Positions 7,667 to 59,420 of a stretch of DNA of 64,000 nt are shown here, in pieces (position 1 is the first letter of the stretch; each line of letters opens with the position of its first letter). Both the position numbers and the translations under genes were made by a program. The notes under the pieces were generated by a model that ran no database searches, was not told the origin of the DNA, and worked only from the letters and a program-made list of their open reading frames with translations. The DNA is from Octopus bimaculoides. Taxonomy: Eukaryota. Location of the stretch: the NCBI RefSeq assembly GCF_001194135.2, contig NC_068982.1:125486796-125550795 (forward strand), read 5' to 3'.

Positions 7667-7729
7667 ATGTGTGTGTGTGTGTGTGTGTGAGTGCGTGTGT
7701 GTGTTTGATTGGTGGTTGGATATATACTC

Positions 7730-37120: not shown

Positions 37121-38285
37121 TTAACTAGTTGGCTTCTCTTTGAAAATCTTCCATAACTGTTTCACCAAATCTGTCAAGACTAGGTCAGTTGAATTTTTAC
37201 CTATTACTCTTAAGACAAAGACTCCATCATTGCGTAAATAGTTGTCTGCAAAGTTTCTATATTGTTTTTTATCGTTATTGATTAGTGGAGTAGCTGAAAG
37301 TTTCAAGTATTTCTTAACGTATGCTGCATTGTTACGTCGGTAAATCATGTAATAGAGCCAACTTATCATGTTTGCTGAAGCTAAAATGGCTACAAAAACA
37401 AACCAGAACCAAAGGAAAATAAAAATCTTTTCATTGAACAGGTTAATAGGCAAGACACATTGGACAGTAAATCGTTGCAGATTAGTCATTTGCCGAATAC
37501 TGAAATCACACAAAGTGACTCGTGGAAATAGTGGTGATTCTTTAAAAGCACCATATTCGTTGAAGTGTTGCATCACTTGGAAACCGTAAATGCCAAAATC
37601 AGTTGATAGAAAACTGTTTAACATAAAGAACTGTCCAATGATATTTACAAGATATAAGACTTTAATACTGAGATAAAGACCAGATAAATATGTTCCTTCA
37701 CGTTTACCACAGAAGCAGCAGCAAATTTTGGCAAACTTTTGGCGAGTTTTCACAACGAAATTACAATGGTAAATACGATTAGAATCAAGCCAACGATCCA
37801 TGAAATATGCTATGTGCTCGATAGTTTTCTTGCGATCATCAGGTGAACCATATTGAGTCTTCTCTGATAATTCACAAAGCTTGTCTAAATTAACGCCTGA
37901 GGTGCCATGAAGAATTCTCCAGAGCAAATTCGGGGCTTTAAACAAAAGAGCTTGAAAAAGAAGAATTAAAGGCACCCACTGGTAGTATGTCAATTGCCTG
38001 TCTTCTCTTTCATTAATATTAACAGGAATCGTGTCTGACATTGGAATATAGTAAGTATTTGAAATCCAGCATATCCATTTGGTATAGGCAACATATGCTC
38101 CTGTGAATTGGGCTGGGCACCAACAGTGTATTGGGTCACCAACCAACTGGCCTGTAGTGACTACTATTGCAAAAAGAACAAGGACAACCGATGAGTATAT
38201 ATGGCTCATGCGATCAACCCAGTCATCATTGGCTGCTGAAGTTAGACGGGAGAAGGTGGAGAAGGATCCGAACACACCCCACACC
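37121..38285 (-). CDS. inx: Innexin (invertebrate gap-junction/hemichannel subunit), main coding exon
   Basis: Translation has the innexin signatures DDWVDRMSH, CWCP...CWISNTYY, YYQWVP, FPRVTLCDF and QCVLPINLFNEKIFIFLWFWF, with four hydrophobic segments. The acceptor tttctttctttgcag| ends at 38286, so the exon starts at 38285 in phase 2 (G GTG TGG...). Stop TAA is at 37123-37121. The ORF-track start MFFFLCR is intronic. The symbol is family-level only. Confidence 0.97.
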
Positions 38286-38794
38286 CTGCAAAGAAAGAAA
38301 AACAAAGCTAATTAATATTTCTGAGCTATAATTACATCTGATAAATAATCGACAATAATCAAACTGCAAACATTTATGTAGGAAAAATGTACAATTAACC
38401 GTTGATAAGTAATAGTTACAAGCATGTAAATGCAGTAGAACTTAACATGTTTGTAGCTATTTCTAGATAAAAGAATATTTATGCAAAGTATACGAAACAT
38501 TTTCTTTACAAATTTGATTTAAAAAAAAAATTTTTTAATTTAAGAAAAATTAAATATTTTTCAAAACAGGTAAAAAAAAAGAAAGATTAAATATACTCAC
38601 CACCTGTCATGAATGGTATATGAAATAATATTTATCAATTTAAATATTTTACAATTCTATAGTGACATGGCTTTTTATAGATATACATTATTTAGCTTAG
38701 ATTTTTGCACTGGAGGAAGGCAAAAGCATTTTAGCAGTAGCATGCTTCTCAAATAGAGCTTATTTTAATTGAATGTCCCTTCTCTTTCAGACAA

Positions 38795-39920
38795 TAATTT
38801 GTGGAAGGTAGGTTTGGTGAGATTGTTCAGATGCTTGAGTGGAGATGTACAATTTTGTGCTGTTTCCAAGAAGTAAGGTGGAGAGGAAGTTCTGCTAAGT
38901 TTCTCACAGGCAAAGAACATAGGTATAAGATTTTCTGGGAAGGTAACACTCATGGGATTGGTGGTGTGGATATACTCCTTGCTGAGAAATGGGTTGATAA
39001 AGGTACTCAAGGTAGTCAGAGTCTGTGATAGAATACTTAACCTTAGACTAGTGCTGCAACATGGATTAGCAACCATTATCTTGGCCTATGCCCCTCAGCC
39101 AGGCCTACCTGATGAACAAAAAGAGCGATTTTATGACACACTCTTTGAGACTACCTTGTTGATGAATGACAGGGACCTTCTCTTCGTGGATGGTGACTTA
39201 AATGGGCATGTTGGACAACATCCAGAGAACTTCCATGGTGTACATGGTGGCAAAGGATTTGGTTCCCGCAATGAGGAGGGAACCAGGATGCTGGAGTTCT
39301 GTGATGTAAATGATCTAATGATCTGTAATACCAACTTCAGGAAACCAGCCAGTCACCTGTTCACCTACCAGTCTGATAGGCACACTAGTCAGATTGACTA
39401 CATTCTCACCAGAGAATAATGAGAAAGATGGCTACTTATAACTGCCAAAACATTCCCAGGTAAAGAATGCACCCCCACAACACAGGTTAGTAGTTAGCAA
39501 CTTCAGGATCAAGACTAAATGGCTGTCCAGAAGATGACCAGTGAGGGAAAAAAAAGGGTCTGGAAGCTTAAGGATCCTCTGAATGGACAGCGCTTTTGAT
39601 GAAAAAGAGGATATAGCATCACATAATGTGGAGGACAATTGAGGGTTCCTACAGGACAACCAGTTGAGGGCTACTGACCAGATCTGTGGCTGATGCAAAG
39701 TCCCCTCTTGACCTAAGGTGACATGGTGGAACAATGTAGTTGAAGGGCCATTAGGGAAAAGAAACTGGCATGGACGGACTGAAGGTGTGGTGGTAGCAGG
39801 GAACTGAATCAGATTGCCAGAAGTGAAGCTAGGAGATACAGGTTTACTTAGCCAGAGAGAAAGCAGATAAGAAAAAATTTGCCAATGTTCTGTGTCATGA
39901 GGACTAGAGACTTCAAGCGT
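38795..39920 (+). mobile_element. RTE-clade LINE endonuclease region, defective, antisense within the innexin intron
   Basis: CCFQEVRW..AYAPQ..GDLNGHVG..GFGSRNEEG..LEFC..NTNF..SQIDYIL are APE-type endonuclease motifs; frameshifted. Confidence 0.92.
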
Positions 39921-40115
39921 TTCTTTAATAATAATGCATATGGAGTTCAAGATAGTGGTTCTAGTGTACAAAACTTAAATCATTCTATATAATTATGTGT
40001 ACATACATGTAGAATGATGTGTGTATACACATGCGTGTGCATTTATAAATACATAATCTTTTGTTTTTATCATTGGACTACACCTATGCTGGAACTTGAG
40101 TTTAGTCAAATTAGT

Positions 40116-40162
<47 letters not shown>

Positions 40163-41689
40163 CGTAGGCATGGTTGTGTGATAAGAAGCTTGCTATTGTG
40201 TGGCACATTAGACAAGTGTCTTCTACTATAGCCTTAAGCCAACCAAAGCCTTGTTAGTGAATTTGGTAGACAGAACCTGAAAGAAGCTAGTTGTGTATGT
40301 GCATGCTTGCCCCCTACCACTGCTTCACAACCTGTGTTGGTGCATTTACATTCCCTGGGGCAGGGTTGATTCGTTCAACAAAGATTCTTCAAAGTGCCCC
40401 AGCATGGCTACAGTGAAATGACTTGAAACAAGACATAGCCTAAGGCTATACTAGAAAACATTTGGAAAAAATGTTGTGTAGTGGGATGAGCCACATGGTT
40501 GGGAAACAAGTTTTTTTATCCACAGCTATTCCTGCACACACACACACACATAAATATATACACACTTCAATATATATATATATATATATACACACTTCAA
40601 TATATATATATATATATATACTACATATGTACACACGTAATTACATATATATGAAAAAGACTAAACGGTTTAAGTGAGGCCTATTATCATTTAAATACAT
40701 TAGCAATGTTATTTCTTAAAATCATTTGAAATCATTATACGAATTTACATATTTTATAAACATTTAAAATCTCAATTGCATTGAGGCTACAAGCCACAAG
40801 AGATCTAAAGGTGTTAAACTTTATTTTACATAATTCCCCCACTCCACTGATGCTTATTTAGAAATAGTTTCACACGAATACTTAATAATTAAAACTGTAT
40901 GTCAATCATTTATTTACTTCATCACATCACCACCACCTGGGAGAAATATTTGTTCTTGTGTCACAGAAAATTTAGTGTATAACAGACCACATGTTTACAT
41001 TGTAATTCCCCCCCCCCATGTTTTATTCTATTGTTTTTTGTTTTTCCAAAAGCAACTGGAGAGATCCCAAAAGCTGCTGATTTAAATGTGTCCAATTGCA
41101 TTTAATGGCAACGTGTCAGCCATTGCTGACTGCAAAAGTCATTGACAAGTTGACAACCAGCTAACAGCAAATAGTAACCTTTTCCCAAAAGGTGGTCTAG
41201 TCTATTCACACACACACCCACACACACACGCACACAAATACACAGCAAACTAATTTTTCAATCCAAGCCAATTTCAAAAACAAAAAAAATTTTTCTTCTA
41301 TTTATCTAGCCTTGAGTTAAAACTAAACCAAGCAACTACAACTACCTTACTACTGTCTCGTAAGCTAGTCACATTACATTTTGAACTCAAATATTACACT
41401 AAAACCAACTAGATATGACTAGCGAAAGACTTCTTTCAATGTTTTTACTGGTGTCTGGATGGAGGAAGGTAGAGAGCTCATGACTTTCGCAAGATTTTAT
41501 AAATTGGTGAGATTCTGGGGATGGGGCAGTGTTGATACTCTGAGTGTTTTAATACAGAAATGGGAAGGAGAGTGAATGCAACAAGGGTGAGACAGAGTAG
41601 AAAGAGGAGTTAGTAAGGGACACTTTAGACAAGGAGGTTATCAGTCCAGCTAGCTGTGAGGAACAGCAGCCACTATCCTATCCCTTCTT

Positions 41690-42032
41690 TTTCTTTTATT
41701 TGTTTTCAGTCCTTTGACCGTGGCCGTGCTGGAGCACCGCCTTTAGTTGACAAATTGACACCAGGACTTATTCTTTGTAAGCCTAGTACTTATTATATTG
41801 GTTCTTTTGTCAAACCGCTAAGTTACGGGGACGTAAACACATCAACATTGGTTGTCAAGCGATGGTGAGGGGACAAACACACACGACAGGCTTCTTTCAG
41901 TTTCTGTCTACCAAATCCACTTGTTCGGCCCAAGGCTATAGTAGAAGATACTTTGCCCAAGGTGCCACACAGTGGGGGTGAACCTGGAACCATGTGGTTG
42001 GTAAGCAAGCTACTTACCACGAACCCACTCCT
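41690..42032 (-). mobile_element. SINE family A copy
   Basis: Reverse complement of the family A head and tail. Confidence 0.8.
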
Positions 42033-42297
42033 GCACCAGGAATAGCAATAAAAACTAGTGAATATCAACTGGGGCTTTGTGAAAGCTATTTTATTAGAGA
42101 ACTTCTCATGAAGTAGATTTAATGAATTTCAACTCCTAAGATATTAAGGAACTCTTTAACCCTTTACCATCTAGCCATATTCATGTATGACTTTATATTT
42201 TTTCAAGCGCAGGAGTAGGTCATCACAGATTCAATACAATTAGATAACACTGCTCGCAGTTTAACTGCAATTATTTTTTTTGATGAATGACATTTAA

Positions 42298-42565
42298 GAG
42301 TGGCTGTGTGGTAAGTAACTTGCTTACCAACCACATGGTTCTGTGTTCAGTTCCACTGTGTGGTACCTTGGGCAAGTGTCTCTTACTATAGCCTCGGGCT
42401 AACCTTGTGAGTAGATTTGGTAGATAGAAGCTAAAAGAGTCCCGTCGTAAATATATGTGTGTGTGTATGTGTTTGCCACCCTACCATCTGGTGTGTTTAC
42501 ATCCCCATAACTTAGCGGTTCAGCCAAAGAGACCAATAGAATAAGTACTAGGTTACAAAGAATAA
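42298..42565 (+). mobile_element. SINE family A copy with a rearranged tail
   Basis: Family A head and body; the tail is interrupted by a templated insertion (see findings). Confidence 0.8.
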
Positions 42566-43189
42566 TTTCATTTGACTGCTCATGACTTTCGCAAGATTTT
42601 ATAAATTGGTGAGATTCTGGGGATGGGGCAGTGTTGATACTCTGAGTGTTTTAATACAGAAATGGGAAGGAGAGTGAATGCAACAAGGGTGAGAGAGTAG
42701 AAAGAGGAGTTAGTAAGGGACACTTTAGACAAGGAGGTTATCAGTCCAGCTAGCTGTGAGGAACAGCAGCCACTATCCTATCCCTTTTTCTTTTATTTGT
42801 TTTCAGTCCTTTGACCGTGGCCTTTAGTCAAGCAAATCAATTTGCTTGACTAAAGTATAAAAGCGCCCATTATTTATGGGATGACCTAATATATGTAGGT
42901 TAACTGACTTTTTTCAGTTTCTATCAATGAAAACAAGGCATTTGTGCCCCTAAGCCTACTCTGTTGAATGGTTGGTGTTAGGAAGGGCATCCAGCCATAA
43001 AAACTGTACTAAAAGACACAGAAGCATGGTTCAGGCTCCTGCCTGCGAGGTCCTGTCAAACCGTTCAACCCATGCCAGCATGGAAGGAGAACGTCAAATG
43101 AGGATGATGAAGGCTATAGCAGAAGACAGTTGCCCATGGAACTGAGCAGTGAGGCTGAACCCAAGACCACATGGTTGGGAAGCAAGCTT

Positions 43190-43466
43190 CATCGTTGCCA
43201 GTGCCCCTGGACTGGCTTGTGCGGATGGCACATAAAAGACACCATTTTGAGCGTGGCCGTTTTCGTGTGGGTGACACGTAAAAGCACCCACTACACTCTC
43301 TGAGTGGTTGGCGTTAGGAAGGGCATCCAGCTGTAGAAACTCTGCCAAATTAGATTGGAGCCTGGTGTTGCCATCCGGTTTCACCAGTCCTCAGTCAAAT
43401 CGTCCAACCCATGCTAGCATGGAAAGCGGACGTTAAACGATGATGATGATGATGATGATGATGATG
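43190..43466 (+). mobile_element. RTE-tail SINE (family E) with (GAT)n tail
   Basis: Near-identical in reverse to 46555-46925. Confidence 0.8.
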
Positions 43467-45634
43467 ACACACACACACGTACATACATGCAAAAGATACA
43501 CAAATATTCATGTCATTTAACTATGCCCATTTAGATTCTTTTTACACAAAATTGGGTTGACTTATCTTTTAAACGGTGTCTATGATGCACAGCTTCCATA
43601 TTTTGCCTTACTTTTTGATCTGCTATTGTTTCATTACAAAAAGATAAATTTATCAATTTTACATGAATAAATGTTATGAGCAAAGTTTCACCAGATAAAA
43701 CTTAAGAAGTCAATGTTCCCTCTGATATAAGGCTGAAAGAGTGCAAAGAAGTTTTTGTTTTCAAATGATTCCAATGTACAAAGTTGTTTCAGTTATCTTT
43801 GTGACACAATGTAGACTAGTGATTCTTACCCTGGGATGGGGGAAGAACTCACAAAGGGGGAGCAACAGTCAGGAGAGGAATGGTCTGAGTGTTTTTTTTT
43901 TCCCCCTATTCCTCTGAACAGCCAAGCTAAGATTTAACTAGATTATAAAGAAAAAAAAAATCTTTGGAAGTCCATTTTGTATAATATTTACTTTAGGATT
44001 CAAGCAGCTCTTTTTAGATGTTACCCGATAATTTCATGTCAGTGGCCAATGCTTGGAAAGAACCGGTAATAAAAGATTTGCTAGGAAAGAAGTTCATTGG
44101 ATAACAAAAAATTCGAAGAGAAAAATATGGCTATAATAAACATTTATAAAAGGATTACTAAGTTCTAGAATGTAAACATAAGCCCATTATTTAAAGTTAA
44201 CTGCAAAGCAGTAATATATGTGCTCGGTTCCTATTCTTCTCATGTTTTTGTCTTACACATCAAAATGAAAATATAAAGTCAACAACAAAGCTACAAAACA
44301 GCTTGTTATGTCTTAATTTTCTACACTTTTGTTCTATTTCTGCTGAAATACACTGCCTTTGTTTTAGTTTTAAGAATAATGAATAATTTACTAAGATAAC
44401 TCGGTCTGAAGGTGGTGTTTGGAACATAAATTAACATCAGAATTTTGATAGGTTTTAATTTAGATCACTTTTATGGAACATTGCATCATAGAACCCAAGA
44501 GCAGTCTCATAGCACCTGTTGCTATGAAGGAATCGCTACATAATGATGTGAAAATCAGTAACTGACATGTATGAGACAGCATGCAGTAATGAGATGAACC
44601 ATTTTTTGTTAGGCTGAAAGGAGACTGTTTTGCAACTAAGGTGTCAATATAATAGCAACCATGTTACCCACTTTTCTTAATTGGTGAAGTCGATGTTTTT
44701 TTTTCACTTCTTCCTTTTACAGAATTCATATTATTCCTATTAAACTATATTGTAACAGAACGAGATCTTGTTACTCTGTTGCTCCATTTATATAGGAAGG
44801 AGAAATCATTTCCTTCTTAATAAGTATATCTTAACTTGTAAAACTTTCAGGTTTTGCTAGTAAAGGATACTTTTTTAAAGATATTGTCTAAATATTGGTT
44901 TAAAATTTTGGCACAAAGCCAGCAATTTCAGAGAAGGATTGATTACAACAACCCCAGTGTTGAACTGGAACTTATTTTATCAACCACAAATGGATGAAAG
45001 GTAAAGTTGGATGAAATGCCATGAAGTAGTTTGCCCAGCAAACTACCAAACATTTCTGCCAGCTCTCATCATAAGATCTTGAACAGATATAAAGCATTGG
45101 ATCTATTTCAAACTTTTTGCTCTTCTTTTCAATACTAATTTTGTTTTCCTACAAAAAATAAAGAACAAAGATTCTTTGTAGTCAAGATCACATTAAAATC
45201 TGAACCAAATGATTTAAGTATTTACATAAATTTTAAGTTTGTTTCACATGGGAAGATATAAACCTATAAACACTCACTTTTGTCTATAATTTACTTTTTG
45301 AAAGCAATTGAAAAATACTTTCCCCAATATTTTTCACCCTTATTATATCCAACTTAACATGGAGGTCTTGTTGGAACACCGAGTATCATCACGCTCTTTT
45401 AACATGTTTTCCATGCTGGACATGGGTCGGACAGTTTGACTGGAGCTAGCAAGCTGGAGAGCTGCACCAATGTCTTGGTTTCTACACCTGGATGTCCTTC
45501 CTAACACTAACCACTTTGCAGTGTGTGCTTTTAATGTGTCACTGCACAAACACTTTTAAGTAAAACTACAAGCACTTTTGTGTGGCACTGGCCCAAGTGC
45601 TTTTTATGTGACACCAGCACAAGACTTGCAATCG

Positions 45635-46054
45635 ACCTTGTTACTGCAGATCCTCACATATAGGTGCTTGGTGCATAAAAGCACAGACACACAGATCATA
45701 GCAGATGAGAATTGTCTGTGATGAGCAGCCGAATTCCCATATGTGATTTTATTCTACTAAAAAGCATCAGTGAAAAGCATCCGGTCACGACATGCCTATC
45801 AAATCTCACTGCTACAATATATAGAATATCAGCATCTTTTAAGACACTAATGTCGCAAATAGCCAGCAGATTTATAACAAAATTCATTATTAATTATGGA
45901 AGCAGTATTCACCAGATGTTTCCCAGTGGTGATTTCCAGGAGAAGGAAATTGTAATATAGGAATTTTGGCACACATGACAGGCAATTCTCATCTGTTATA
46001 ATTTGTGTGTGCTTTTAGGCACCAAGTGCCAATATGAAAGGACCTAACAAAGGT
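45635..46054. repeat. Foldback element with ~80-bp imperfect inverted arms
   Basis: 45661-45723 (ggtgcttggtgcataaaagcacagacac..cagatgagaattgtctgtgatg) pairs with 45972-46036. Confidence 0.7.
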
Positions 46055-46433
46055 AATAACACAGTATTCAGTATTCTAACAACACATCCATGTTAAGTTG
46101 GATATAATGGTTACTATATGGCATTGATACTGCTTATGTTGCTAATATTTCATTTTTCACTGTTTTCAAAGGCACAAAAGTGACCATGTTGTTTAGAAGA
46201 TTGCTACCCAACCAAGAGGTTTTGAATGCCAACCCACTGTGCAGCAGCTTGACAAGTGCCTTCTGCTGAAGCCAGAGGCCACTCACACTTGTGACCGAAT
46301 TTGGCAGATGAAAACTATAGGAAAGCTATGTGTGCATATTGTTCAAAATCCATGTTCATAAGCTTTTATATTGTCTTCCTAAATACCAAATATTAAGCAA
46401 TCATTTTATTGATTAAAAACAGAAAGACAAGAG

Positions 46434-46497
<64 letters not shown>

Positions 46498-46554
46498 TTT
46501 CCAGCATGGACAACAAATGTTAAATGATGATAACAATATATCAATATATATATA

Positions 46555-46925
46555 TATCATCGTTTAACGTCCGCTTTCCATGCTAGCATTGGTAGGAAGA
46601 TTTGACTGAGGACTGGTGAAACCAGATGGCTACACCAGGTTCCAATCTGATTTGGCAGAGTTTCTACAGCTGGATGCCCTTCTTAACGCCAACCACCTAG
46701 AGTGTAGTGGGTGCTTTTACATGCCACTGGCAAGAAGGCCAATCAGGCAGTACTGGCAACGGCCATACTCAAAATGGTGTATTTTATGTGCCACCCACAC
46801 AAGAGCCAGTCCAGGGGCACTGGCAACGATCTCGCTCGAAAATCCTTACACATGTCACGAGCACAAGTGCCAGAAAGGCGATGCTGGGCACAGGTGCCAT
46901 CCTGATTTCGCTTTCGCTTGCCCCA
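46555..46925 (-). mobile_element. RTE-tail SINE (family E)
   Basis: Begins catcatcgtttaacgtccgctttccatgctagc, the reverse complement of the family E tail. Confidence 0.8.
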
Positions 46926-47756
46926 ATAAGTCTTCACAAGCTAAGTTTATCTCACATATTAGTTTCGATCAGAAAAATTTAAATGAAACTAAGGTATAAA
47001 AGCAAACTACATTGGTAGCAGTCAAATTTTTCATTCAAGAGTCTTTTATAACCCAATATTTACATGTTTATATTATATATATAGCTTCATCTATTTAAGT
47101 TCCCCCGTTCAAAATTTGTGTGTATGCACATGCACTGTAAAGCACACAAAACATTTAGTTCAGTAGTGACCCTCACTCAATTAATATGATCTTTTTCTTT
47201 AAATTTATTTAACCTAAACATGGTATTATTTCTAGTGGGAAGTAAAAAGGGGAAGAGATCAGGACTTTCTTCAAAATAATATTCAACTAGAGCATTACAT
47301 CACAGCCTTGATAGCGATAGTTTTACTGAATGTTGCTGATTGTAAGAAGGATTTTTAAACATTATTGCATAAGTGGTTTTGCTAATGTGGTAGGGATACT
47401 TGTACATATAACTAAACCAAAAAGTCAAAATGTTAGCCAATATCTAGAGCTGCTACATGCAGTAATGATACATAAATGGCAGGCAGTGGAGCAAGACATG
47501 CAGTGAAGCATTTGACAATATTGTTTTCACCTAATAGACAGCTCAGATTTAAAGTTAGTAGAGTTTAAATGAAAAGGTGCCGATCTTGAATACCAGTTCA
47601 GTAACTATTTAGGTCATAAAACTAGGTAAAAAAAAAAATTATGCCTGTTGAAACATACACGCACCAAGGAGAGCAGTTAATGGGATAGCTTTACAAATCA
47701 AAAATCAGCAATCAATTACTACGGTTAAGTATTATACATCAAACCTAAAAATTTGA

Positions 47757-47975
47757 CCCTTTAGGATCTAAACAGGCTATATCCAACCAAAATATTGTAC
47801 CTGCTTCATGTTCAAACTGGCTAGATCCAGCCTTTCACATCCACCCTACAATGTCAATCTAGAAATATAAACAATCACATCATCAATTGATATCTCAAAG
47901 CAACAAGATAATTCATGATTAATTCAAAGCAATATGAATAAATATATTTCACGGAGAAACTTCAATGCTAAAGGG
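47757..47975. mobile_element. piggyBac-like MITE
   Basis: TTGA|CCCTTTAG ... AATGCTAAAGGG|TTAA: TTAA-type target site and CCC..GGG TIRs. Confidence 0.65.
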
Positions 47976-48066
47976 TTAAATACCACAGCATTTAATACAT
48001 TTGATACCAACCCACATAAGATCACTTGTGGTTCTGATGCAAATTACCTGTTTTAAAGTGATTTAA

Positions 48067-48277: not shown

Positions 48278-48531
48278 TTAAAACTTTCCATCAAAATGTC
48301 ATGTTAACTTATGCAAACACCAGCTTGAGTTATTTTAAATTCTTCATTGTATTAATAATTGACTAACACAAGGCAAGTGCATTTCAACATAAATATAGTA
48401 ATAAATACGTTAAATCCTGAGCTTATTCTATCATAGTCATGCTTCTATGACCTAAGGTTACTAGCACCACTTGATTCTGTAGACAAAACCTGTAAGGAAA
48501 CTAGTTAATCCTGGATACCTAAACCATTTTT

Positions 48532-49089
48532 GGATCTTTTTTAAAACGGGGGCCACATTTTTCATTAACAAAACACTTTGAAACTTGGAACACTGGTAGA
48601 ATGTGTCATAAAACATCTTTTTCTCTTAGTCTTCTTAAAAAAAAAAGAAATCCATAAATTATTCCATGTTAAAGTTGTCGAATTTCTGTAATTTCAACCA
48701 ATCACTGACGTCCATTCAGTCGATATACATTAAGTGCCGACTACATAAACAAACGATTCTGAAACAATTAACCCTAACCCTAGGGTTAGGGTTAGAGTTA
48801 AAGCAAATTTAAAATGAAAAAAGCAAATAAAACGAAGGTATGGAGATTAAATACGCTTTACATCGCTTAATGAGCCAAAGGAGTAAATGTAAACAACTGA
48901 ATACTTGTCAGTGATTGGTTGAAATTATCGAAATAAGAATTTTTTACATGAAATAAATTCGAATACAAAAATATTTTTCTGTTCTATAACACAAACTAGA
49001 TAAGTATACGAAGTTTGAAAGTCTTTCGGTACCAAAAACACTACGTAAAACATTAATGAAAAATGTGGCCCCTGTTTTAAAAAAGATCC
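48532..49089. mobile_element. MITE with ~38-bp TIRs and an 8-bp TSD (Merlin-like)
   Basis: TIR GGATCTTTTTTAAAACGGGGGCCACATTTTTCATTAA with its near-perfect inverse at the right end. Flanks CCATTTTT / CCATTTTC (7/8 match). Subterminal inverted repeat at 48691-48720 / 48894-48926. Confidence 0.8.
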
Positions 49090-49423
49090 CCATTTTCCCC
49101 TCCAGTTAAATATAAACTTGAGCGGCAGAGACATAGCTTTCATAGACAACAAAATGCTCTCAATAGGATAAGGAATATTGACCACCACATGAAGGCTAAT
49201 AACTTGAACTGAAAATGCAATTATGCTGAAAGCTTCATTAGAGTTAATTTTACTACAGCATCTTCATTTTTATTAAAAATTCACAGGATCTCTCAAATGG
49301 TTACAAAGAAGATAAAGAGAACGAGTTGAAGAGCAACATTATTAAGCAAAATAACTAAATGTAAGAGAAAAATTTAATCCAAAGCCAAAACAGTTCAAAC
49401 TAGAAGCATGCAGAGAGAAGTGT

Positions 49424-49480
<57 letters not shown>

Positions 49481-49664
49481 TGTAGAAAGACATGTATATA
49501 GAGAAAGAGAGAAGGGGGGAGAGAGAGAGAAAGAGCAAAAAGGAAGTAGGGAGAGAGAGCAAAAAGGAAGTAGGGAGAGAGAGCAAAAAGGAAGGAGGAG
49601 CCAGGACAGAATAAGCTATATTGACTAAACATTCTACATGGGAGAAAAGTTGAGTTTCACTTAC

Positions 49665-49720
49665 CCCATTGTTTTATTTAAAAGGGCTGGTTAGGATTGA
49701 GTATACAGATATTTTCCTAA
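49665..49720 (-). CDS. Candidate alternative start exon of the innexin (coding part 49669-49665, ATG GG)
   Basis: Acceptor ttatttttctaacag| at 49722-49721, then ...AAAACAATGGG|GTAAGT. Good Kozak context (A at -3, G at +4) and a perfect donor, phase 2. Gives MGVWGVFG..., 389 aa in total. Confidence 0.5.
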
Positions 49721-50912
49721 CTGTTAGAAAAATAACTAATTAATTAAAATTCAAGATAAAATAAAGACTAATAACTTATTAATGAAACATTTCAAGTCTT
49801 ATTTCTTACATCTATTATAGAGTACAAAAAGTAAAAATTTACATTATAAATATAACACCAGCTGAAATAAAAGCAATAAGCCTATCTGCTGGAGGAGTGT
49901 TGACTGGTGTTATAAACGAAGCATTTTGCAATGACATTATTTTAATATCCATCAACCTCTGTGACTTATTTTACACACTTAAGCTTTTTGAATTTCTGAT
50001 TGTGTAAAGTTCAATAACCAACTGCTGTCTCAACACCAGAAACCAAGACTAATGATTGAGTCTAAGAAACAGAATATTTGTTTAGTCAGAGCATCTGATA
50101 GAATATGCTTTGCAGCATTTCTTCTGGCTCTCTGCACATTGAGTTCAAGTCCCAAGATCAACTTTACTTCTTATCAGATTACCAGATTACCAGTCAAGTG
50201 ATGGGATTAATTCTCTCTCTGGAAGAAGTCAATTATGACCTAGAGAAAGATGGGCACAGCCCTATTGTAATAAGCCAAGCATCTTCCTAAAATTTATCTT
50301 TAATGTATTTCAAAGCATACCACGTGAACCTCTTTGTCAAATCCCTTTTAGATAAGCTTTCAGAATTATTGAGCCTCCAGTGATTTTCCTTGGTTGCTTT
50401 GGTAATTCAGGACTTGTTTTCCGGCAACTAACACTAAATTTTCCTACACAAATGAATCAGGCATTCCTGTATGGAAAAGAAATACCAAGATTGGACTACA
50501 AATAGTGAATTACATTACTTTTCACGACTGACTCCCATCAATTTTTTTTTCCATTTGTTTAACTAACTCAACTAAGAGCATACCTACATATTTTTTATTC
50601 ACAAATAAAATTTCTATTTTGGGCCTAGACCACAATTTTTGAAAATGCGCTACTTTACGAAATTCATCTGAGAACTCCAGTTCAGAGCAACTATATTCCT
50701 TTACTGTGGTTACAGTGTAGGACTTATGATCGTAAGATTGTGGTTTCGATTCCCAGTCTGGGCAATGCATTGTGTCCTGTCCAGTGAGGAATATATATGC
50801 TAGAGAAACCAGCCCAATGCTCCTTAAAGAGTAATGTGGACTAACTAATATTCCTTTATTACCACTTACTCCTAAGCTATTATCTATTACCAGCTTCTAC
50901 AACAGATTTAGT

Positions 50913-51269
50913 GGAGGCACAATGGCCCAGTGGTTAGGGCAGCAGACTCGCGGTTTCGATTCCCAGACTGGGCATTGTGTTTATTGAGCGAAAACACCTA
51001 AAAGCTCCACGAGGTTCCGGCAGGGGATGATGGCAAACCCTGCTGTACTCTTCCACCACAACTTTCTCTCACTCTTACTTCCTGTTGTGCCTGTAATTCA
51101 AAGAGTCAGCCTTTTCACACTGTGTCATGCTGAATATCCCCGAGAACTATGGTACACGTGCCTGTGGAGTGCTCAGCCACTTGCACGTTAATTTCACCAG
51201 CAGGCTGTTCCATTGATCGGATCAACTGGAACCCACGACGTTGTAAGCGACGGAGTGCCAAGAACAACA
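50913..51269 (+). mobile_element. SINE family B copy
   Basis: Same sequence as 22359-22744 and 25806-26170. Confidence 0.85.
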
Positions 51270-54200
51270 GATTTAGGTTGTACCTTTAAACTTTTGTAAT
51301 AAAAAGAAATTAACAACAAAAAAAAACCCACCACCACTAATGGAATACATCCAAAATATTTCCTCTGCACAGACACCATATATAGAAATATTAACACTTT
51401 ATTAAACCTTCTAAACACAAACTAGAACCAAATACAATCTCGTATGACAATCTAGAGAAACTCTTTACAATATTCAAGCATTAATGAAAATGTATAATAT
51501 ATATGTAATGCCCTTTTACAATCTAAGCTCAGTATTTATGAAAAATGCTAAGTGACCTCATCATCAGATTATGAAATTATTCAGATAATATACAAATGTT
51601 GATTAATAATAGTCTAAAAGTCAAATTTCTGATTCAGATAAACAATTCTTTATTATTCAAATGATTATTTCTCAGTCTTTCCAATTTAAATTCATCTAAT
51701 CTTGTAAAATTGTCCTTGAACACCCACACTTGAACTGGAGAGAGGTCAGGGAAAATGGAAAGCAGGTTTAGTTTGAGTGTATAACCAAAACTCAAATTGT
51801 AATTTCATCATTTTATGTCCATGTTCGATGCTGACATGGCTTGGACAATTTGACATGACAGATCTTACATTAAAGTACACCATTTGCTTTTCATTGATCT
51901 TTATTAGAAAGTGCTCTTCAAATTTTATCTCAAATTACTAGCTTCTTGCCAGAAAAATAATTCAAGATTTAATATTTCTTCATGGAATGTGTTGTCTAAA
52001 GTAAGAAATCTACTTTCTTGGTACTCTAAAGCTTTTGACTAAATACAGTGGTGCACATATGTAAGCAAGGATGTGTACATCTGAAAGTCTAGCAATACTA
52101 ACCTTCATAATGGAAATTAGTTTGAAATTAACATAGTATCTCTTTGCCAATAACATATATGTTTAATTCTGTCTCCAAAAATGTCAGTCTCAGGATTTTA
52201 AAAATTAAGTTCATGAGACTAAATAAATAGCAAACTTCCCAGGCACAGCCTTCAATAAAATCAAATTTTATTGTTATTTTTTTTAAAGTTCCACTTTTCT
52301 CATGGAAAAAAGCTGTTTTTTTCAAACTGGATTGTCTTCTTTGCAATGGCTAAAGCAGGAAGAAGCAATTTATCTGAACTGGAAAAATTAATTCAGTTGT
52401 ATCTACTGACACCTATCGACCTTGATGACCTGAATATGTGACATTATGATTTCAAAATAGAAAAACGTAACGTTTAATGAATAATCTAAGACAATGAATG
52501 CTAAAAGTTCATAAGCACAGATTACATGAAAAACAAAATAACTATTTAGCTTAGGTTACTAGAAGACATCAACATATAAACGACAACTTAAGATATTAAA
52601 AAGAACTCTGCAGAGAAACAGAATTATCCATTTCAGTTCGCCTAGCTTGTAAATATCTTAAAGGTCTCTCCCAAGATTATGTAGGACTCATAGTTTGTAA
52701 GCTGTTTTGGTGCATCACGTATTCCTCAGTAAACTTGATGAAATGCTGGCGAAAACAATCTAAACTTGTATTTGAAAACATCCAATTCTTCATGCAAATA
52801 GTATTTGCTGGCTGGTTGTGTTGTTAAGAAACGCTTTCTGCAAATTATGATTTCGTGTTCGATTCTTCTTTTCAGTACCACAGGTATTGTTCATACCAGC
52901 CTAGGTCAAAGATCTTGCGAAATTTGGTAGATAGAGAACAATTTGAACGAAACAATTGTTGCATTCAGTAAATGAAGTAGTGAGTAGTGAAAGTAGTCGT
53001 TCATAGTGAAAGAAGTTCAAAGTGAAAGTAGTTCAAAAAATAATTCATTCATATTGAAGACTTCGTAGTGAAACTGTCATTCATTCATGAAAATAAGTCA
53101 TTACATACAAAAGATTGTAGTATTGTACTTTCATTTTCTCGCTGTTTCGATCAGTAAAGTAGCACGCAAATATATCATCTTTAAAAAATCTTAAACATTT
53201 CAAATTATATATAAATGTAGCTTTGGGCTTCCTTAACATTTGTCAAAGAACTTTTTCAATTAAAATACATTTTCAGCCTTCAACAGTCGGAAAAATACCA
53301 TTCCAAGTTTTTATGAAGCTAACTGGGACAATAATAATAATGTTTTCATTGAATAAGAAGCATACCTACAGTTTTAACCCATAATCACCGACTTTGTTTC
53401 TTCGTAATTTAATGAAAAATGGTAATTTCTTAATGAAATTCTGCAAAGTAAATAAAAAAAAGCACCCAGTACACTCAATAAAATTTTGAGTTAGGAATCA
53501 TATTCAGCCACACAAACTATGCCAAAGCAGACATTGGAGTTTGACGCAGTCTTCTGGTTCATCGATCCTGTCGAACCATCCAAACCGTGCCAACATGGAA
53601 GATGGACGTTAACTGATGACTTTTATCAGCGTAGTTTTAATTCACACACTCCAAGACTTGTCCCTGCATAGTTTCATTAAAAAATACGAAGAAACAAAGT
53701 CGGAGAGACGTGAAACTGTAGCTATGTCACAGAATATGCATAACTTTAAGAGTATTCTACAGAGACGACGGGAATTGCGAGGAAACCGTCCGGAGCAACC
53801 GTTCGCATTCTTGGGCAGGTAGCAGACTTAATGTGTCGCTCAATTTAACATCGCATCTGGCCTTGGAGTACCTTTAAGGAAGTCCGTTTCAGTAGCTTTA
53901 AGACAAATGTTAACCTTCTTCCTTGCACTGAACAATCAAAAACATTAATAAAGTAAAAAAATATCTCAGATAGAGCATGCATGCAACAGCAAAGCTTGCC
54001 TTATGTACCAGGATTTATTCTGGTTTGTCAAATATTACGAATGGATTATTTTTGGCAGAAGAGAGCTGAACAGAACTCTAAATTAAACAAAATAGTGATA
54101 AAGAAAAAAAAAAAAAAAANNNNNNNNNNAAAAAAAAAAAAAAAAAAAGAAAAGAAAAAAAAAGGAAGACTACTTACTGACTCCTGAGGAAAAGATATAA

Positions 54201-57200
54201 CAGAAAAATAATGAAAATTTAAATCATTTTCGCATAAGAACCATAAAGAGAAAAATAATGATGAAACAAGAGTAGAAAATAATTCATAAATAATTATTAA
54301 TTCAATTCAATCGATGATTAATTACATTAAAACATTAATATTTGAAATTCATGCAAAAAAAAAAAAAAAAAAGTAAATATTAAGCAACAAAAAATTGTAC
54401 TTAGAAAGTTTTTAAATCTGCTTCCTACAGGGCACTTCAAAAGCAAGGTTTGAGAATGAATACACACATCCACATTGATTATTTTAAATACCAATTTTCA
54501 AAGTGATATTTATTGATTTATTCTTTAAGATTTTTTATTTAGTTACTGTGAAAGTATGACGAAATCTAGAAAACATGTCAAAATACATTTGTATTATAGA
54601 TTTTATACTCTTCGACTACTTGAGGAAACATTTTTGAATCACCAAGTTAAAAAGTGCATTTCTTGCTAAGTCCGAAAGTGCATTTCTTGCTAAGTCCGAT
54701 AAAATGTAACGATAAGTTTATTTAGTTATTTACCTAAACTTTCTAGATAATTTCTAGAAGATTAACATACGTTTATTTCAAAAGACAGCATGCATTTATT
54801 CCTATTTTGAACGGTTGATCCTAGAAGTGATAATCTGAATTTTTTCTCACAAAGAAATCGTAGTTGTCAGAAAATTATGATGGAAAAAATGCTTAAAGGA
54901 GGTTTCCATTAGATTCTGATGATTACAAAATAGAACATTAGCCATTTACGACGAGATTAAAGTTCAAGCTCGACAAAACGAAGAACGAGTGAAGCATACG
55001 ATAACAAGGACTGTCAGGGCATTGGAAGACGCAATACGGCAGAACTTTCCAACTTTTTTCTTACCTTCAAATAGATTGAGAAGCAACCAATCTAGCGTCC
55101 TAAATTAGAGTTAAAACGGTTTCAAGATAAAGATGTATAGTAAGCTAAGCAAATAACGACGCAGTGTTAGGAGTGCCATGAAGTTGCCTTCGTGACGCTA
55201 TCACAGCAAGATATCTTTTACATTTGCTTCAATCATCAGACTACGGCCAAACTGGGGCACCCCCTTGGCGGGTTTCGGCTGTTTTTTAAAAAAAAATTCT
55301 AGTATTTATTCTATCAATCTTTTCGCCAAACCATAAGTTACGGGGGCGGAATCAAACCAATATCAGTTGTCAAGTGGGGTAAACACAAACACATACAAAA
55401 GCCGGGCTTGCAGTTTCCGCCAACAAAATTCGCTCAAGACATTGCCCAAGGTGCCGGATAGTGAGACAGAACCTAAAACTAAGTTCTTAAACACAAGGCC
55501 TATATAAGCAATCTTGTTTACAATCGAATCTCGTAAACTTAGGACCGTTGAATTCTAAATAGGAGAAAACGGAGACAAGTTTTAATAAAAATTGACTGGG
55601 CTTCAAAATACCGTGTTGATGAATATAATTGTGCCTGTGGCGGTTCCAGGTACAAAGGAAAATCTTGGCAAGATAGAACAAATCAATAGAAAAAAATCTT
55701 TTTGATTACAATTTTTCGAACATTGGTAGATATTTCTAACACAATTAGCAACATAGGAGGATGTCGATTTACTCATCTTCTGTATTCGAAAAATTTTGGA
55801 AGATAAGTCGACCTCGCTAAGATTTGAACACTTGAAAGTGAAAAGATGTATTTCAATACCATGAGGCATTTTGGGCAGGATTGCTTGTCACTGACTTGAA
55901 AAATTATAATGAAAATGAATTTCTAACATGTGAAACTACAAATGGGTGACGTGATCGATGAGTAGACCCAAGTTACTCAAGTTCTTAAAAGAGAACAGTG
56001 TTGTAGTAACTGCCCCTACCTCGAAGCCCCATACATCATGAAAGGAGCACGGGAGAGGGCAAAAATGCATAATAATAGAAATTTTTGGATAATCATTTTT
56101 CCAGGATTATTTCCGTTGTATGAAAGAAGTATACAGGCAAAGTAAAGAAAACAATTCTTTCTGCTTTTCTCTGGTACTTCGAAGTATAGGTATTCCATAA
56201 CTCCGCCCGCAAAGGGACGAAATAATCAAATCCCTCCGATATGGTTTCTACTATTCTCTCTTTTAAACAAGAAACATTGTAGGGCTTCTGTAATTCTCGC
56301 AAGTGCGGGGACGAAATTTGCTTAGGTGTTGGAAACACGGGTCCAACCTAAGATGCTTGAAACAGTTTTTTTTTTGTCCACCGACCACAAAAAAAAAAAA
56401 AAAAAAAAAAAAAGTGACTGCGTTTGTATCCCCCGTTCCCGAGCCTATGGTTTATTTATTCAAAACAGATACACTTTACATTAAAAAGATGACCAATTTG
56501 CTATGCTAGATCTCCAGTTTGTAATCTAAAACTTAGTCATGTTTTGCAAGTGTTTTTACAACTAACTTTACGCTGGACTTAATAAATAGTTTTGAACAGG
56601 AATCTGACAAACTTGTACCAGTTTGATGAGCAGTTTAAAGTTACTCCAGGATAGTTAACTGCATCATTACAAAGCATTTACATTTAGATGCAAAAAAACC
56701 TCCATATATTTAGACGTGTTGTAGCCGTTCTAGAAATCAGTTTTAATTAACATTCGAACATGGTTCGGGTTATCTATAAACATTTCGATAAATTTGATTG
56801 GTAAATTATAAGAAAAAAATACAGGAATAAAATTTTCATAGACTATGCTAAAAATATTTAAATTTCAAATTTAATAACTTAATTTTTAAAAGAACCTAAA
56901 ATCAATGTGATCGGGACAGAATTTCTCAAAATGCATTTCAGGGCGAAAAGTAAATAAGGTTACATGAAATTAAATAAAAATTGAAAATCAACTAATTTTA
57001 CAATAATACTGCATAGAAAAACGCGCCAAAAAGTACAGACATGTTTTTAAAAAAAAACAAGTTTATTAAGGAAACTGCATTGTAAATGCACATTTTTATA
57101 CAGTCTATAGTTTAAGTTTACTTTCATTTGATTTAACAAATCACAAAAAATACCCTAATTCGCACACAAAAGTTAAAAGCTGAAAATAAGATAAATAAAG

Positions 57201-59326
57201 ACTAGACCCCAATCTTTTGTTACTACCCTCCACTTATTTACCGGGCGCCATTGTCAATATGACACCATTTTAGGGAGAAGTCTCTCTTTTAACTGTCAGA
57301 ACAATAAAAGTAGAAAAAATAAAAACCTATACTACTACTATACTTGTATGATAATAAAGTGAATTTTTCTTACAACTGACTGTCTACATCACAAATAGTA
57401 CATACATACAGTGACATACAACAAGCACAGACCGTGAAAATCAAACCCCCCCTCATTCACAAAGCTCTTTAACCACCGCCACGTTGTTAAGTGTCTATAA
57501 CATGTTCCAGATTCACTATATTTACCATTATTGATTATACAAAGGAGACGGAATTCAGAAAAGAGCTGCAGCCTGACGAAAACCTTATCTATTATAAATG
57601 TAAATTTTTAAAAACATTTTCTATAAAAAATAATGGCATTTTTAAAAATGATGGTAAAGAAAATTCTTTCTTCCCTTACATGGGAGGAAAATTTTCCGCA
57701 AGGATTTGTTTATCAAACTTCTGAAAGTCGCCAGAAAAAAAAAACAAAGTATGGAATTATTAAGCAAGGCATAGTAAAAATTAAACGAAAATGCTATTTT
57801 GCTATTAAAGTAATACATGTAGACGACAGTAAAAGCGAATATTCTTCGGCTAATTCTACTGCCAGTCTACATTGCTCAGAGAGCTTCTCTAAAAATTGAC
57901 AGAAATCCCTAGGTGCAGGTGGAAAGAGGGGAATATATCGACTCAGTCCCTCATCTCAGTCATAGCTGAAGCATGCGGGAAATGCATGGGGAGGGGGAGA
58001 AAAATCGATTTAATATTCAACTAACAGGACATTCTCCAAAAATACCATTATTGTTCTGGACATGCTTACATCATACTATTCAAATCTCTTCTAAACCTTG
58101 AATATCCCATTATCAATGAATATTTTGTAATCAATAAGATGCAATAGATTTAGTTATCAGTTAAATACTGATAAACTTTTAAGGGGAGGAAGGCAGCAAT
58201 AACCAGACTTGCAGCCCTTAAGAACCGCCATCGCCATTACTGTTCAGATTCTTTATTTCAAAAAATCTAGAGTTTAAAAAAGATGGAGAAGTATGTATAA
58301 AAATATATTAAAGAAAAGAGAAATGAAAGCCTAGTCAAAAATGCTTTTAAGAAATAATCGGAAAAAAACGAGCTGAGTTTGTTGTGCCAATAAAACAGTA
58401 ATTAACCTTCAACATAAAAAATACAAACTACGCCAAATTAAAAACGTCAGACACGTGTTATATTATTTACATTCATAAGTATCCATTTACCTATTATTGA
58501 GAATCAGAACCCTATAAAATCTCTGACCCTTAAACGCTATACTAACACGAAATCCCTCTCCTCTAATAAATCACTAAATTTATAACTCTGGGATTTTGTA
58601 AAAATTCCATAGATTTGTAAATAATAAACTCAGCAATTAACTGTCCTGGTAGTAATATTATGATTTCGTGGGAGGTACAATTTTATATTGTATATATATA
58701 TGCATGCGTGTGAAGAATATTCCACATGCTACATAATTTACTTTATATTCAGATACAAATAAAATGGAAAGATGGATCTTTGAGCTTCAAGCATTCTTCT
58801 TTATAGAACTCGCTTAATTTGTTGGGATTAATTTAATTGTTCGATACTATAAATATAGTCAAATGCTAAAAAAAAAATTTCGAACGTTTTCTTTTATAGG
58901 AATAATGATACTAAAATGTTAGTTCAGTCGGAGCTCAGGTAAATTAATTGATTAAAGAGAACTGTAGCGGCGGTGTTAATAAGTTCAAAAACAAAACAAA
59001 AAAAAAACTTTAGTCTATGCATGTAATAAAGAACATTCCATACGTTAAATGTATTGTCTTTGGTATACAAACTGTACTTACATGTTTTCTTTGAAATCAA
59101 CTAGAACTGATGTTTAAACTTGCAAGTTTCTTTTATAAAAACTATGCAAAGAAAACTTTTATATTAAGAAGGATGGCTGAGAATAAATGCTATCTCATAA
59201 ATTTCCTTCATCAATATCGCGGCTTCTTTCTCTTCTGGCTTTCAGTTTCAGAAAAGTGCACATTTTTGGAAAGCCCCCCTCAGAGAATATCGTCTATGCA
59301 CGTCGGTTGTAAACATTAGAACTCAC

Positions 59327-59420
59327 ATCAGTAAGTAGTTCGTAGATAAAACACACGCTCGGCGACGACGACAGACCAGCTCTCTCTTTCTCTGCAAACG
59401 ACACTTTTTGTTAACAATGA
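59327..59420 (-). other. Candidate first exon of the innexin; ends in AT, forming ATG on splicing to the main exon
   Basis: Inr-like TCATTG near 59420, a CpG-containing leader, then ...TACTGAT|GTGAGT (consensus donor at 59326-59321). AT plus the first G of the exon at 38285 gives ATG in frame (MVWGVFGSF...). Confidence 0.5.

What the first reader, a model, noticed from the sequence alone, without database searches (positions are those of the whole stretch)
38285..59420. Innexin start codon may be assembled by splicing (AT|G) across a 21-kb intron
Seen: the main exon starts at a strong phase-2 acceptor with a lone G and has no upstream in-frame ATG. The promoter-like exon at 59420-59327 ends ...CTGAT|GTGAGT, so joining gives ATG GTG TGG (MVWGVFGSF...). 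Established: innexin N-termini line the pore funnel (C. elegans INX-6 structure) and alternative N-termini set gating and rectification (Drosophila ShakB isoforms). Inference: start-codon creation depends on exact splicing, and the gene may use several first exons to vary the N-terminus.
Basis: partly seen in the sequence, partly recalled or inferred. Interest (0 to 1): 0.8.

Follow-up and report, generated by a model that had tools for sequence, protein, structure and literature searches.

The report
Octopus innexin split start codon

Summary
The minus-strand exon 38285-37121 encodes a complete innexin apart from its start codon. It begins with a lone G after a strong acceptor, and an in-frame stop lies just upstream. 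So the ATG must come from splicing.

However, the motif is no more frequent than chance, it reads CTGTT|GTGGGT in Octopus sinensis, and it lies outside the annotated coding range. The annotated and conserved donor is AAAACAT|GTAAGT, with AT at 59083-59082. It is identical in O. sinensis and conserved in Argonauta.

Public models give three N-termini:
- M-VWG: AT + G.
- MSQ-VWG: AT + a conserved 6-nt microexon (54183-54178) + G.
- MG-VWG: a separate exon ending ATGGG at 49669-49665.

In a second, more distant cephalopod species (not named by the tool), assembled mRNA compared with genomic contigs shows the junction directly. The same AT|GTAAGT...cag|G layout occurs in limpet, whelk and scallop innexins and in an octopus paralogue.

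The assembly gap (54120-54129) lies in an intronic poly-T run and does not affect the reading frame.

Verdict: the mechanism is right and the donor is misplaced. The feature is already captured by annotation. Interest is modest.

The parts
37121..38285 (-). Main coding exon: the G that completes codon 1, then 387 codons (VWGVFGSF...KEKPTS) and the stop codon TAA at 37123-37121. It encodes the whole innexin.
   Evidence: Pfam PF00876 Innexin E=7.3e-95. Matches INX-6 (5h1q) at E=1.9e-46. 100% identical to the RefSeq O. bimaculoides innexin unc-9 isoforms.
38286..38314 (-). 3' splice site: polypyrimidine tract tttgtttttctttctttgcAG (AG at 38287-38286), with the in-frame stop TAA at 38314-38312 upstream.
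   Evidence: The acceptor is conserved in another octopus species (L004/L005: ttctttctttacag|GGTGTGGGG) and in the more distant cephalopod genomic contigs (tttttcag|GGTGTGGGG).
59082..59083 (-). The 'AT' of the split start codon; last two bases of the upstream exon (...TTCAAAGAAAACAT|).
   Evidence: The annotated coding range of the gene in GCA_001194135.2 starts exactly here. The same site is the coding start in O. sinensis (L002 position 10001) and Argonauta hians (L003 position 10001).
59076..59081 (-). 5' splice site GTAAGT of the AT-donating exon.
   Evidence: Identical in O. sinensis and GTGAGT in Argonauta.
54178..54183 (-). Optional 6-nt microexon GAGTCA (ttttcctcAG|GAGTCA|GTAAGT). AT+GAGTCA+G gives ATG AGT CAG, the MSQ- N-terminus.
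   Evidence: One search is the only match to the pattern needed for MSQ. The roughly 40-nt block including the polypyrimidine tract and GTAAGT is conserved in O. sinensis and Argonauta. MSQVWG isoforms are XP_014772954.1 (O. bimaculoides) and XP_036354388.1 (O. sinensis).
49665..49669 (-). ATGGG at the end of an alternative ATG-bearing exon (aaataaaacaATGGG|GTAAGT). ATGGG+G gives ATG GGG, the MG- N-terminus.
   Evidence: One search finds a single ATGGGGT between the AT exon and the main exon. The context is conserved in O. sinensis (L002 19241) and Argonauta (L003 21916). MGVWG isoforms are XP_014772955.1 and XP_052821541.1.
49665..49720 (-). Possible extent of the MG exon if it is an internal cassette exon (56 nt), preceded by a conserved acceptor-like TTTTTCTAACAG at 49732-49721. 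Inferred, not shown.
   Evidence: The 23-nt block ttagttatttttctaacagttag is identical in Argonauta within otherwise diverged sequence. Joining AT to this exon gives ATT TAG, so the first AUG would be the MG one.
59321..59328 (-). Probably a chance or species-specific motif inside the promoter or 5'UTR block.
   Evidence: Not conserved in O. sinensis (TT|GTGGGT) or Argonauta. Motif frequency equals chance. Lies upstream of the annotated coding range.
58936..59573 (-). Conserved promoter / 5'UTR / proximal-intron block around the AT donor.
   Evidence: Mostly 92-100% identical to O. sinensis (two 60-nt windows dip to 72-77% at a 14-nt indel at 59150-59061), against about 87% for the surrounding intron. 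Five collinear short blocks are shared with Argonauta.
54120..54129 (.). Assembly gap inside an intronic poly-T run. Not part of any exon.

Best explanation
This is the Octopus bimaculoides innexin 'unc-9-like' gene on the minus strand. One large exon (38285-37121) encodes the entire channel protein except the first two bases of its start codon.

An upstream exon ends in ...AAAACAT at 59083-59082. Splicing its GTAAGT donor to the cag|G acceptor at 38286|38285 removes a 20,796-nt intron and creates AUG GUG UGG (M-V-W-G-V-F...).

The main exon starts with the third base of a codon, and that base is G. Other upstream exons can therefore attach to it:
- A conserved 6-nt microexon (GAGTCA, 54183-54178), included between AT and G, gives MSQ-VWG.
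- A separate exon carrying its own start (ATGGG, 49669-49665) gives MG-VWG.

Shown here: the exon and splice-site anatomy, the annotated isoforms, conservation across octopods, the mRNA-versus-genome junction in a more distant cephalopod orthologue, and the same architecture in gastropod and bivalve innexins.

Inferred: that the three N-termini (mature ends V-, G-V-, S-Q-V- after Met removal) change the pore-lining N-terminal helix enough to alter channel gating or docking.
For: Main exon:
- It lacks a start codon, and an in-frame stop lies upstream of the acceptor.

Annotated coding ranges:
- The coding range starts at window 59083, 'AT|GTAAGT'.
- The longest product on record for that gene is the 389-aa MG form, whose ATG is at 49669. 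The range must therefore span several isoforms, and none of them starts upstream of 59083.
- The O. sinensis and Argonauta coding ranges start at the homologous AT|GT(A/G)AGT.

Isoforms:
- RefSeq/GenBank list MVWG, MGVWG and MSQVWG forms in 3-4 octopod species.
- The exon ends needed for MG and MSQ each occur once, at collinear and conserved positions.

Transcript evidence in a more distant cephalopod orthologue (74% identical):
- Ten of the 24 RNA-derived Logan contigs that carry this protein were read, and all ten read ...ggaaatATGGTGTGGGG.
- Genomic contigs read ...tttttcag|GGTGTGGGG.
- Similarity between the two starts exactly at the G of ATG.

Other molluscs:
- AT|GTAAGT ... cag|G is also found in Patella vulgata, Pecten maximus and Babylonia areolata.
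- An O. sinensis paralogue has it too; its annotation lists a 2-nt coding piece.
- Among 120 mollusc homologues, the isoform junction residues are M, Q, R, G and E, all NNG codons. Nineteen database entries carry '[FYCHSLP]R|' read-through N-termini, as expected from ...yyy cAG|G.
Against: - No O. bimaculoides transcript could be retrieved. For this species the junctions rest on public gene models plus conservation, not on reads seen here.
- The tool reports only coding ranges, not exon tables. The 5' end of the AT exon and the transcription start are unknown, and the exon may not be the first one.
- The functional effect of one or two extra N-terminal residues is untested.
Confidence: 0.85

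Rival explanations
1. One reading: an exon at 59420-59327 ending CTGAT|GTGAGT is the one spliced to 38285. It would supply the AT, either exclusively or as an O. bimaculoides-specific alternative donor of the same 5' exon.
For: - The motif exists with a perfect GTGAGT.
- It lies in the conserved promoter/5'UTR block, and the block starting at 59426 is conserved even in Argonauta. Transcription may therefore start upstream of it.
Against: - ATGTRAGT frequency equals chance.
- O. sinensis has TT|GTGGGT there, and Argonauta has no such site.
- The annotated coding range starts at 59083, not 59328.
- The 59083 site is the one conserved in all three octopods.
Confidence: 0.1
2. There is no split start. 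Translation starts inside the main exon, at the GTG/TGG region by non-AUG initiation or at Met26, and the AT|G models are gene-prediction artefacts made to rescue an open reading frame.
For: - Prokaryote-style ORF callers do produce 'MWGVF...' from GTG (P0164).
- Gnomon can force start codons.
Against: - Assembled mRNAs of the more distant cephalopod orthologue carry a real AUG fused to GUGUGG that is absent from the genomic contigs.
- The 25 residues before Met26 are conserved across molluscs.
- AT|GTAAGT donors with an A-rich Kozak-like context recur in Patella, Pecten, Babylonia and octopods.
Confidence: 0.03
3. The MG-encoding exon is a true alternative first exon with its own promoter, not a cassette exon downstream of the AT exon.
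For: - Alternative first exons are common in innexin genes (ShakB; own knowledge).
- The tools give no exon table, so this cannot be decided here.
Against: A 23-nt pyrimidine-rich block ending CTAACAG sits 56 nt upstream of the donor. It is identical in Argonauta within otherwise unalignable sequence and looks like a branch point plus acceptor.
Confidence: 0.35

Closest known systems
Innexin family (Pfam PF00876); C. elegans INX-6 (PDB 5h1q/5h1r)
   Same: Full-length Pfam match (E=7.3e-95). Homology to INX-6 over residues 12-372 (E=1.9e-46). The YYQWVP motif and paired extracellular-loop cysteines are visible in the translation.
   Different: Only about 30-35% identical to INX-6. The first 11 residues, which are the part that varies here, are not in the alignment, so nothing here shows how they sit in the pore.
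Drosophila shaking-B (ShakB) N-terminal isoforms from alternative 5' exons
   Same: One innexin gene gives proteins that differ only at the N-terminus through alternative 5' exons. In ShakB this sets the rectification of electrical synapses (own knowledge, Phelan et al. 2008).
   Different: ShakB isoforms differ by tens of residues. Here the difference is 0, 1 or 2 residues (M / MG / MSQ), made by a split start codon, a 6-nt microexon and a 5-nt coding exon end. No functional data exist.
Split (intron-interrupted) start codons in eukaryotic genes
   Same: ATG interrupted after the second base by a canonical GT-AG intron. The annotation of the O. sinensis paralogue lists a 2-nt coding piece.
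   Different: Usually sporadic in single genes. Here the position is shared by innexins of cephalopods, gastropods and bivalves, and it also accepts alternative upstream exons.
Neuronal microexons (3-27 nt)
   Same: A 6-nt, frame-preserving exon with a strong polypyrimidine tract and consensus GTAAGT, conserved across octopods.
   Different: It lies inside codons 1-3, immediately after a split start codon. Its tissue specificity is unknown.

Membership tests
Innexin (PF00876) | Significant full-length match to the Innexin profile | tested here: met
   E=7.3e-95, residues 21-381 against profile positions 1-332 of 333.
Innexin (PF00876) | Sequence homology to a structurally solved innexin | tested here: met
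   INX-6 (5h1q), E=1.9e-46, residues 12-372.
Innexin (PF00876) | YY(x)W motif in TM2 and two cysteines in each extracellular loop | tested here: met
   TYYQWVPLILLFQ; HCWCP...ICW in loop 1; TLCDF...VQCVLP in loop 2 (translation).
Innexin (PF00876) | Forms gap-junction or hemichannel conductance | not testable with these tools
   Needs expression and electrophysiology.
Split start codon (AT|G) | The coding exon lacks an in-frame ATG before conserved residues, and an in-frame stop lies upstream of its acceptor | tested here: met
   TAA at 38314-38312, no ATG before 38285; the first internal Met is codon 26.
Split start codon (AT|G) | An upstream exon ends in AT followed by a canonical GT donor, at a conserved position | tested here: met
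   AAAACAT|GTAAGT at 59083-59076. Same site in O. sinensis and Argonauta.
Split start codon (AT|G) | mRNA carrying the joined AUG in this species | not testable with these tools
   No O. bimaculoides transcript contigs were retrievable. It is shown only for the more distant cephalopod orthologue and implied by RefSeq models.
   Motif count 7 against 6.97 expected. TT|GTGGGT in O. sinensis. Absent in Argonauta.
Microexon | AG|N(3-27)|GT, frame-preserving, conserved, and matching an annotated isoform | tested here: met
   AG|GAGTCA|GTAAGT at 54185-54172. Conserved in three octopods. Explains the MSQ isoforms.

The most novel reading that the evidence does not exclude
The 'main exon starts with a lone G' layout may be an ancestral molluscan innexin design that works as a universal socket. 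Any upstream exon ending in two bases of an NNG codon (AT, CA, GG, GA, AG/CG) can be attached. Cephalopods would then use a split AUG, a 6-nt microexon and a 5-nt coding exon end to make channels whose pore-lining N-termini differ by one or two residues and in N-terminal processing: free Val or Gly versus probably acetylated Ser. That would tune voltage gating or rectification of electrical synapses cell by cell.
Probability: 0.25. Interest if true: 0.6.

Novelty: already known. Interest (0 to 1): 0.3.

Why it matters
For genome annotation:
- This is a clear case where an ORF-based reading fails. The gene has no start codon in its genomic sequence.
- Public protein collections hold many mollusc innexin entries with false N-termini. 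Examples are '...FCR|' read-through of the acceptor and 'MWGVF' from GTG.

For biology:
- The innexin N-terminus lines the channel funnel.
- A conserved mechanism that makes M-, MG- and MSQ- variants of one channel is a cheap, testable source of electrical-synapse diversity in cephalopod nervous systems.

The gene models already exist in RefSeq and the phenomenon is a known kind. The main value here is correcting the donor position and showing that the architecture is shared across the family.

Tried and rejected
- Looked for O. bimaculoides transcript contigs carrying the junction. An exact look-up of the 388-aa isoform found nothing on record. N-terminal fragment searches with 128 aa and 71 aa returned no octopus fragments.
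- The Logan contigs L004/L005, 98% identical to the query over the 79% they cover, turned out to be unspliced genomic DNA of another octopus. They gave acceptor conservation only.
- The 5'UTR of the more distant cephalopod orthologue has no detectable similarity to the octopus upstream region, so it could not locate the octopus exon.
- A TATAAAAG (59137-59130) plus TCAGTT (59110-59105) pair upstream of the AT looked like a TATA/Inr core promoter. Argonauta has only a TA microsatellite there, so no transcription start is claimed.
- Pfam scans of eight other window ORFs, taken as possible transposon fragments, gave no hits.
- Six literature searches or look-ups found no paper describing split start codons in innexins.
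- Searching for ATG-TCN/AGY-CA|GT as a single exon end for the MSQ form found nothing. The answer was the microexon.
Full report
**What is at the coordinates**

On the minus strand, an acceptor ttctttctttgcAG (AG at 38287-38286) is followed by GGTGTGGGGTGTGTTCGG.... Taking 38285 as the third base of a codon, the exon reads VWGVFGSF... for 387 codons to the stop TAA at 37123-37121.

- The product is a complete innexin: Pfam PF00876 at E=7.3e-95 and INX-6 structures at E=1.9e-46.
- Upstream in frame there is a TAA at 38314-38312 and no ATG.
- The first internal ATG is codon 26, after a segment that is conserved across mollusc innexins.

CTGAT|GTGAGT is indeed at 59328-59327|59326-59321. It does not stand up as the real partner, for four reasons:

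- ATGTRAGT occurs 7 times in the window against 6.97 expected from dinucleotide-preserving shuffles.
- There are two copies on the minus strand upstream of the main exon. The second is AAAACAT|GTAAGT, with AT at 59083-59082.
- The public annotation of this chromosome (GCA_001194135.2, CM046602.1) gives the gene a coding range that maps exactly to window 59083-37121. The longest product recorded for that gene is the 389-aa MG isoform, whose ATG is at 49669. The range must therefore span several isoforms, and none begins upstream of 59083.
The 59083 site and its surroundings are identical there.

Argonauta hians has no ATGTRAGT in the corresponding upstream stretch. Its annotated coding start is TTCAAAGGAAACAT|GTGAGTA, which aligns with TTCAAAGAAAACAT|GTAAGTA in the window.

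**The three N-termini**

A protein search returned RefSeq/GenBank isoforms that differ only at the very start:

| N-terminus | Length | Species |
|---|---|---|
| MVWGVF... | 388 aa | O. bimaculoides, O. sinensis X3, Argonauta X2 |
| MGVWGVF... | 389 aa | O. bimaculoides XP_014772955.1 / XP_052821541.1, O. vulgaris X2 |
| MSQVWGVF... | 390 aa | O. bimaculoides XP_014772954.1, O. sinensis XP_036354388.1 |

I looked for the exon ends these forms require.

- **MG form.** ATGGG|GT occurs once between the AT exon and the main exon: aaataaaacaATGGG|GTAAGTgaaact at 49669-49665. Its context is conserved in O. sinensis and Argonauta.
- **MSQ form.** No single exon end fits. A 6-nt microexon does: ttttcctcAG|GAGTCA|GTAAGT at 54185-54172, so that AT+GAGTCA+G gives ATG AGT CAG. 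It lies in a block of about 40 nt conserved in all three octopods, within otherwise diverged Argonauta sequence.

The resulting intron lengths are:

- 20,796 nt for the M form.
- 4,898 nt plus 15,892 nt for the MSQ form.
- 11,379 nt downstream of the MG exon.

A 23-nt block ttagttatttttctaacagttag lies just upstream of the MG exon and is identical in Argonauta. It looks like a branch point plus acceptor. This suggests the MG exon is a 56-nt cassette exon (49720-49665). Joining AT to it gives ATT TAG, so the split AUG is not formed and the exon's own AUG becomes the first one. This last point is inference.

**The assembly gap**

The Ns at 54120-54129 lie in a long T-run about 47 nt 3' of the microexon donor.

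- A single BLAST alignment with O. sinensis crosses it (window 60053-53445 against L002 9017-15534).
- The sequence after the gap (ctttatcactattttgtttaatttagagtt) matches O. sinensis directly after a much shorter T-run.

The gap is intronic in every isoform, so continuity of the reading frame does not depend on it.

**Transcript-level evidence**

I could not retrieve O. bimaculoides transcripts. A second, more distant cephalopod orthologue (74% identical; the tool does not name the species) is carried on 24 Logan contigs.

- Ten of the 24 contigs were read. All ten are spliced mRNAs with a 5'UTR of 500-590 nt, reading ...ttggaaatATGGTGTGGGGTGTATTTGG.
- Genomic contigs of the same or a very close species read ...tttttctttttgtttttcag|GGTGTGGGGTGTATTTGG.
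- BLAST similarity between the mRNA and the genomic contig starts exactly at the G of the ATG (mRNA position 594, genomic position 2300).
- The similarity of that mRNA to the octopus window also starts exactly at 38285.

This is direct evidence that the AUG of this orthologue group is made by splicing.

**A family-wide layout**

Four further genomic loci show the same structure:

| Species | Upstream exon end | Main exon start |
|---|---|---|
| Patella vulgata | aatcaaaAT\|GTAAGT | tttcag\|G TTT GGT |
| Pecten maximus | aacaaacAT\|GTAAGT | attacag\|G ATC AGT |
| Babylonia areolata | cttagcAT\|GTAAGT | gtgcag\|G TCT ATA |
| O. sinensis paralogue | gcagatAT\|gtaagt (annotated 2-nt coding piece), plus an alternative exon ATGGGTTCAGACGAGGA\|GT | tttccag\|G ATT GGC |

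A chiton innexin is the exception. It has an intact ATG one base after an acceptor-like acag.

The 120 best mollusc homologues point the same way:

- 63 start with M 17-22 residues before the DDWxDR anchor.
- 19 carry N-termini of the form ...[FYCHSLP]R| followed by the conserved sequence. That is what translating ...yyy cAG|G from unspliced DNA gives; the window's own TTG-started ORF reads MFFFLCR|VWG.
- Where isoforms differ, the junction residue is M, Q, R, G or E, all NNG codons.

The G-first main exon with interchangeable upstream exons is therefore a shared molluscan innexin architecture.

**The upstream region**

Window 59573-58936 is mostly 92-100% identical to O. sinensis, against about 87% for the introns. 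It dips to 72-77% in two 60-nt windows at a 14-nt indel just upstream of the AT. It also contains five short collinear blocks shared with Argonauta.

Its proposed 3' end is the unsupported part. The transcription start cannot be set with these tools.

**How it most likely works, and how sure I am**

- Shown: the anatomy, the conservation, the annotated isoforms and the junction in a more distant cephalopod orthologue.
- Inferred: after Met removal the mature N-termini would be V-W-G, G-V-W-G and S-Q-V-W-G. The last is probably N-acetylated (general rules of N-terminal processing, own knowledge). The innexin N-terminus lines the pore funnel in INX-6, and N-terminal isoforms set rectification in ShakB (own knowledge). 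The variants could therefore tune gating. The alignment to INX-6 starts at residue 12, so nothing here tests that.

**Novelty**

The isoforms, and hence the split start, are already in RefSeq/GenBank models for several octopods. Split start codons and microexons are known kinds of feature. I found no paper describing this for innexins. The family-wide conservation and the microexon reading are small additions, not a new kind of system.

Noticed in passing
window 59268-59279 (minus strand): GGGGGGCTTTCC, an NF-kB/Rel-type motif (GGGRNWYYCC), lies about 190 nt upstream of the AT donor. It is identical in O. sinensis and reads GGGGACTTTCC in Argonauta, inside a 39-nt conserved block.
   Followed up: partly
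window 58936-59036 (minus strand, inside the first intron): An intronic element of about 100 nt (…TTGAACTTATTAACACC…TTAATTTACCTG) is 98-100% identical to O. sinensis and 73% identical to Argonauta, where the surrounding intron does not align. It may be a proximal enhancer or splicing element.
   Followed up: partly
window 49721-49743 (minus strand): The block ttagttatttttctaacag|ttag is identical in Argonauta. It suggests the MG-encoding exon is an internal 56-nt cassette exon rather than a first exon.
   Followed up: partly
L018 1460-1510 (chiton Liolophura sinensis innexin): This innexin has an intact ATG one base after an acceptor-like ...ctctcgacag|T. The intron appears to sit 3 nt further upstream than in other molluscs, in the 5'UTR, or has slid.
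   Followed up: no
database proteins P0012, P0019-21, P0028, P0032-34, P0040, P0048, P0050-51, P0053, P0065, P0083, P0088-89, P0095, P0097; P0164, P0166, P0167: Many mollusc innexin entries in public protein collections have artefactual N-termini. They were translated through the polypyrimidine tract and cAG|G ('...FCR|') or started at GTG ('MWGVF') on unspliced contigs.
   Followed up: yes
window 7726-7769 (minus strand): Three ATGT(A/G)AGT copies lie exactly 18 nt apart, so they sit in a short tandem repeat. They account for three of the seven motif hits in the window.
   Followed up: no
window 493-968, 11483-11804, 13194-13598, 14896-15150, 28383-28923, 61102-61244, 62515-62676 and eight shorter runs: There are fifteen assembly gaps in the window. 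Several are flanked by TA/TG/CT microsatellites, seen as the YIYIYI and SLSLSL 'ORFs'.
   Followed up: no
window 38952-39419 (+) and 16574-17293 (-): These ORFs have a retrotransposon-like look (for example ...GDLNGHVG..., and an RT-like tail) and lie in the intron and downstream of the gene. No Pfam match at E<=0.01.
   Followed up: partly
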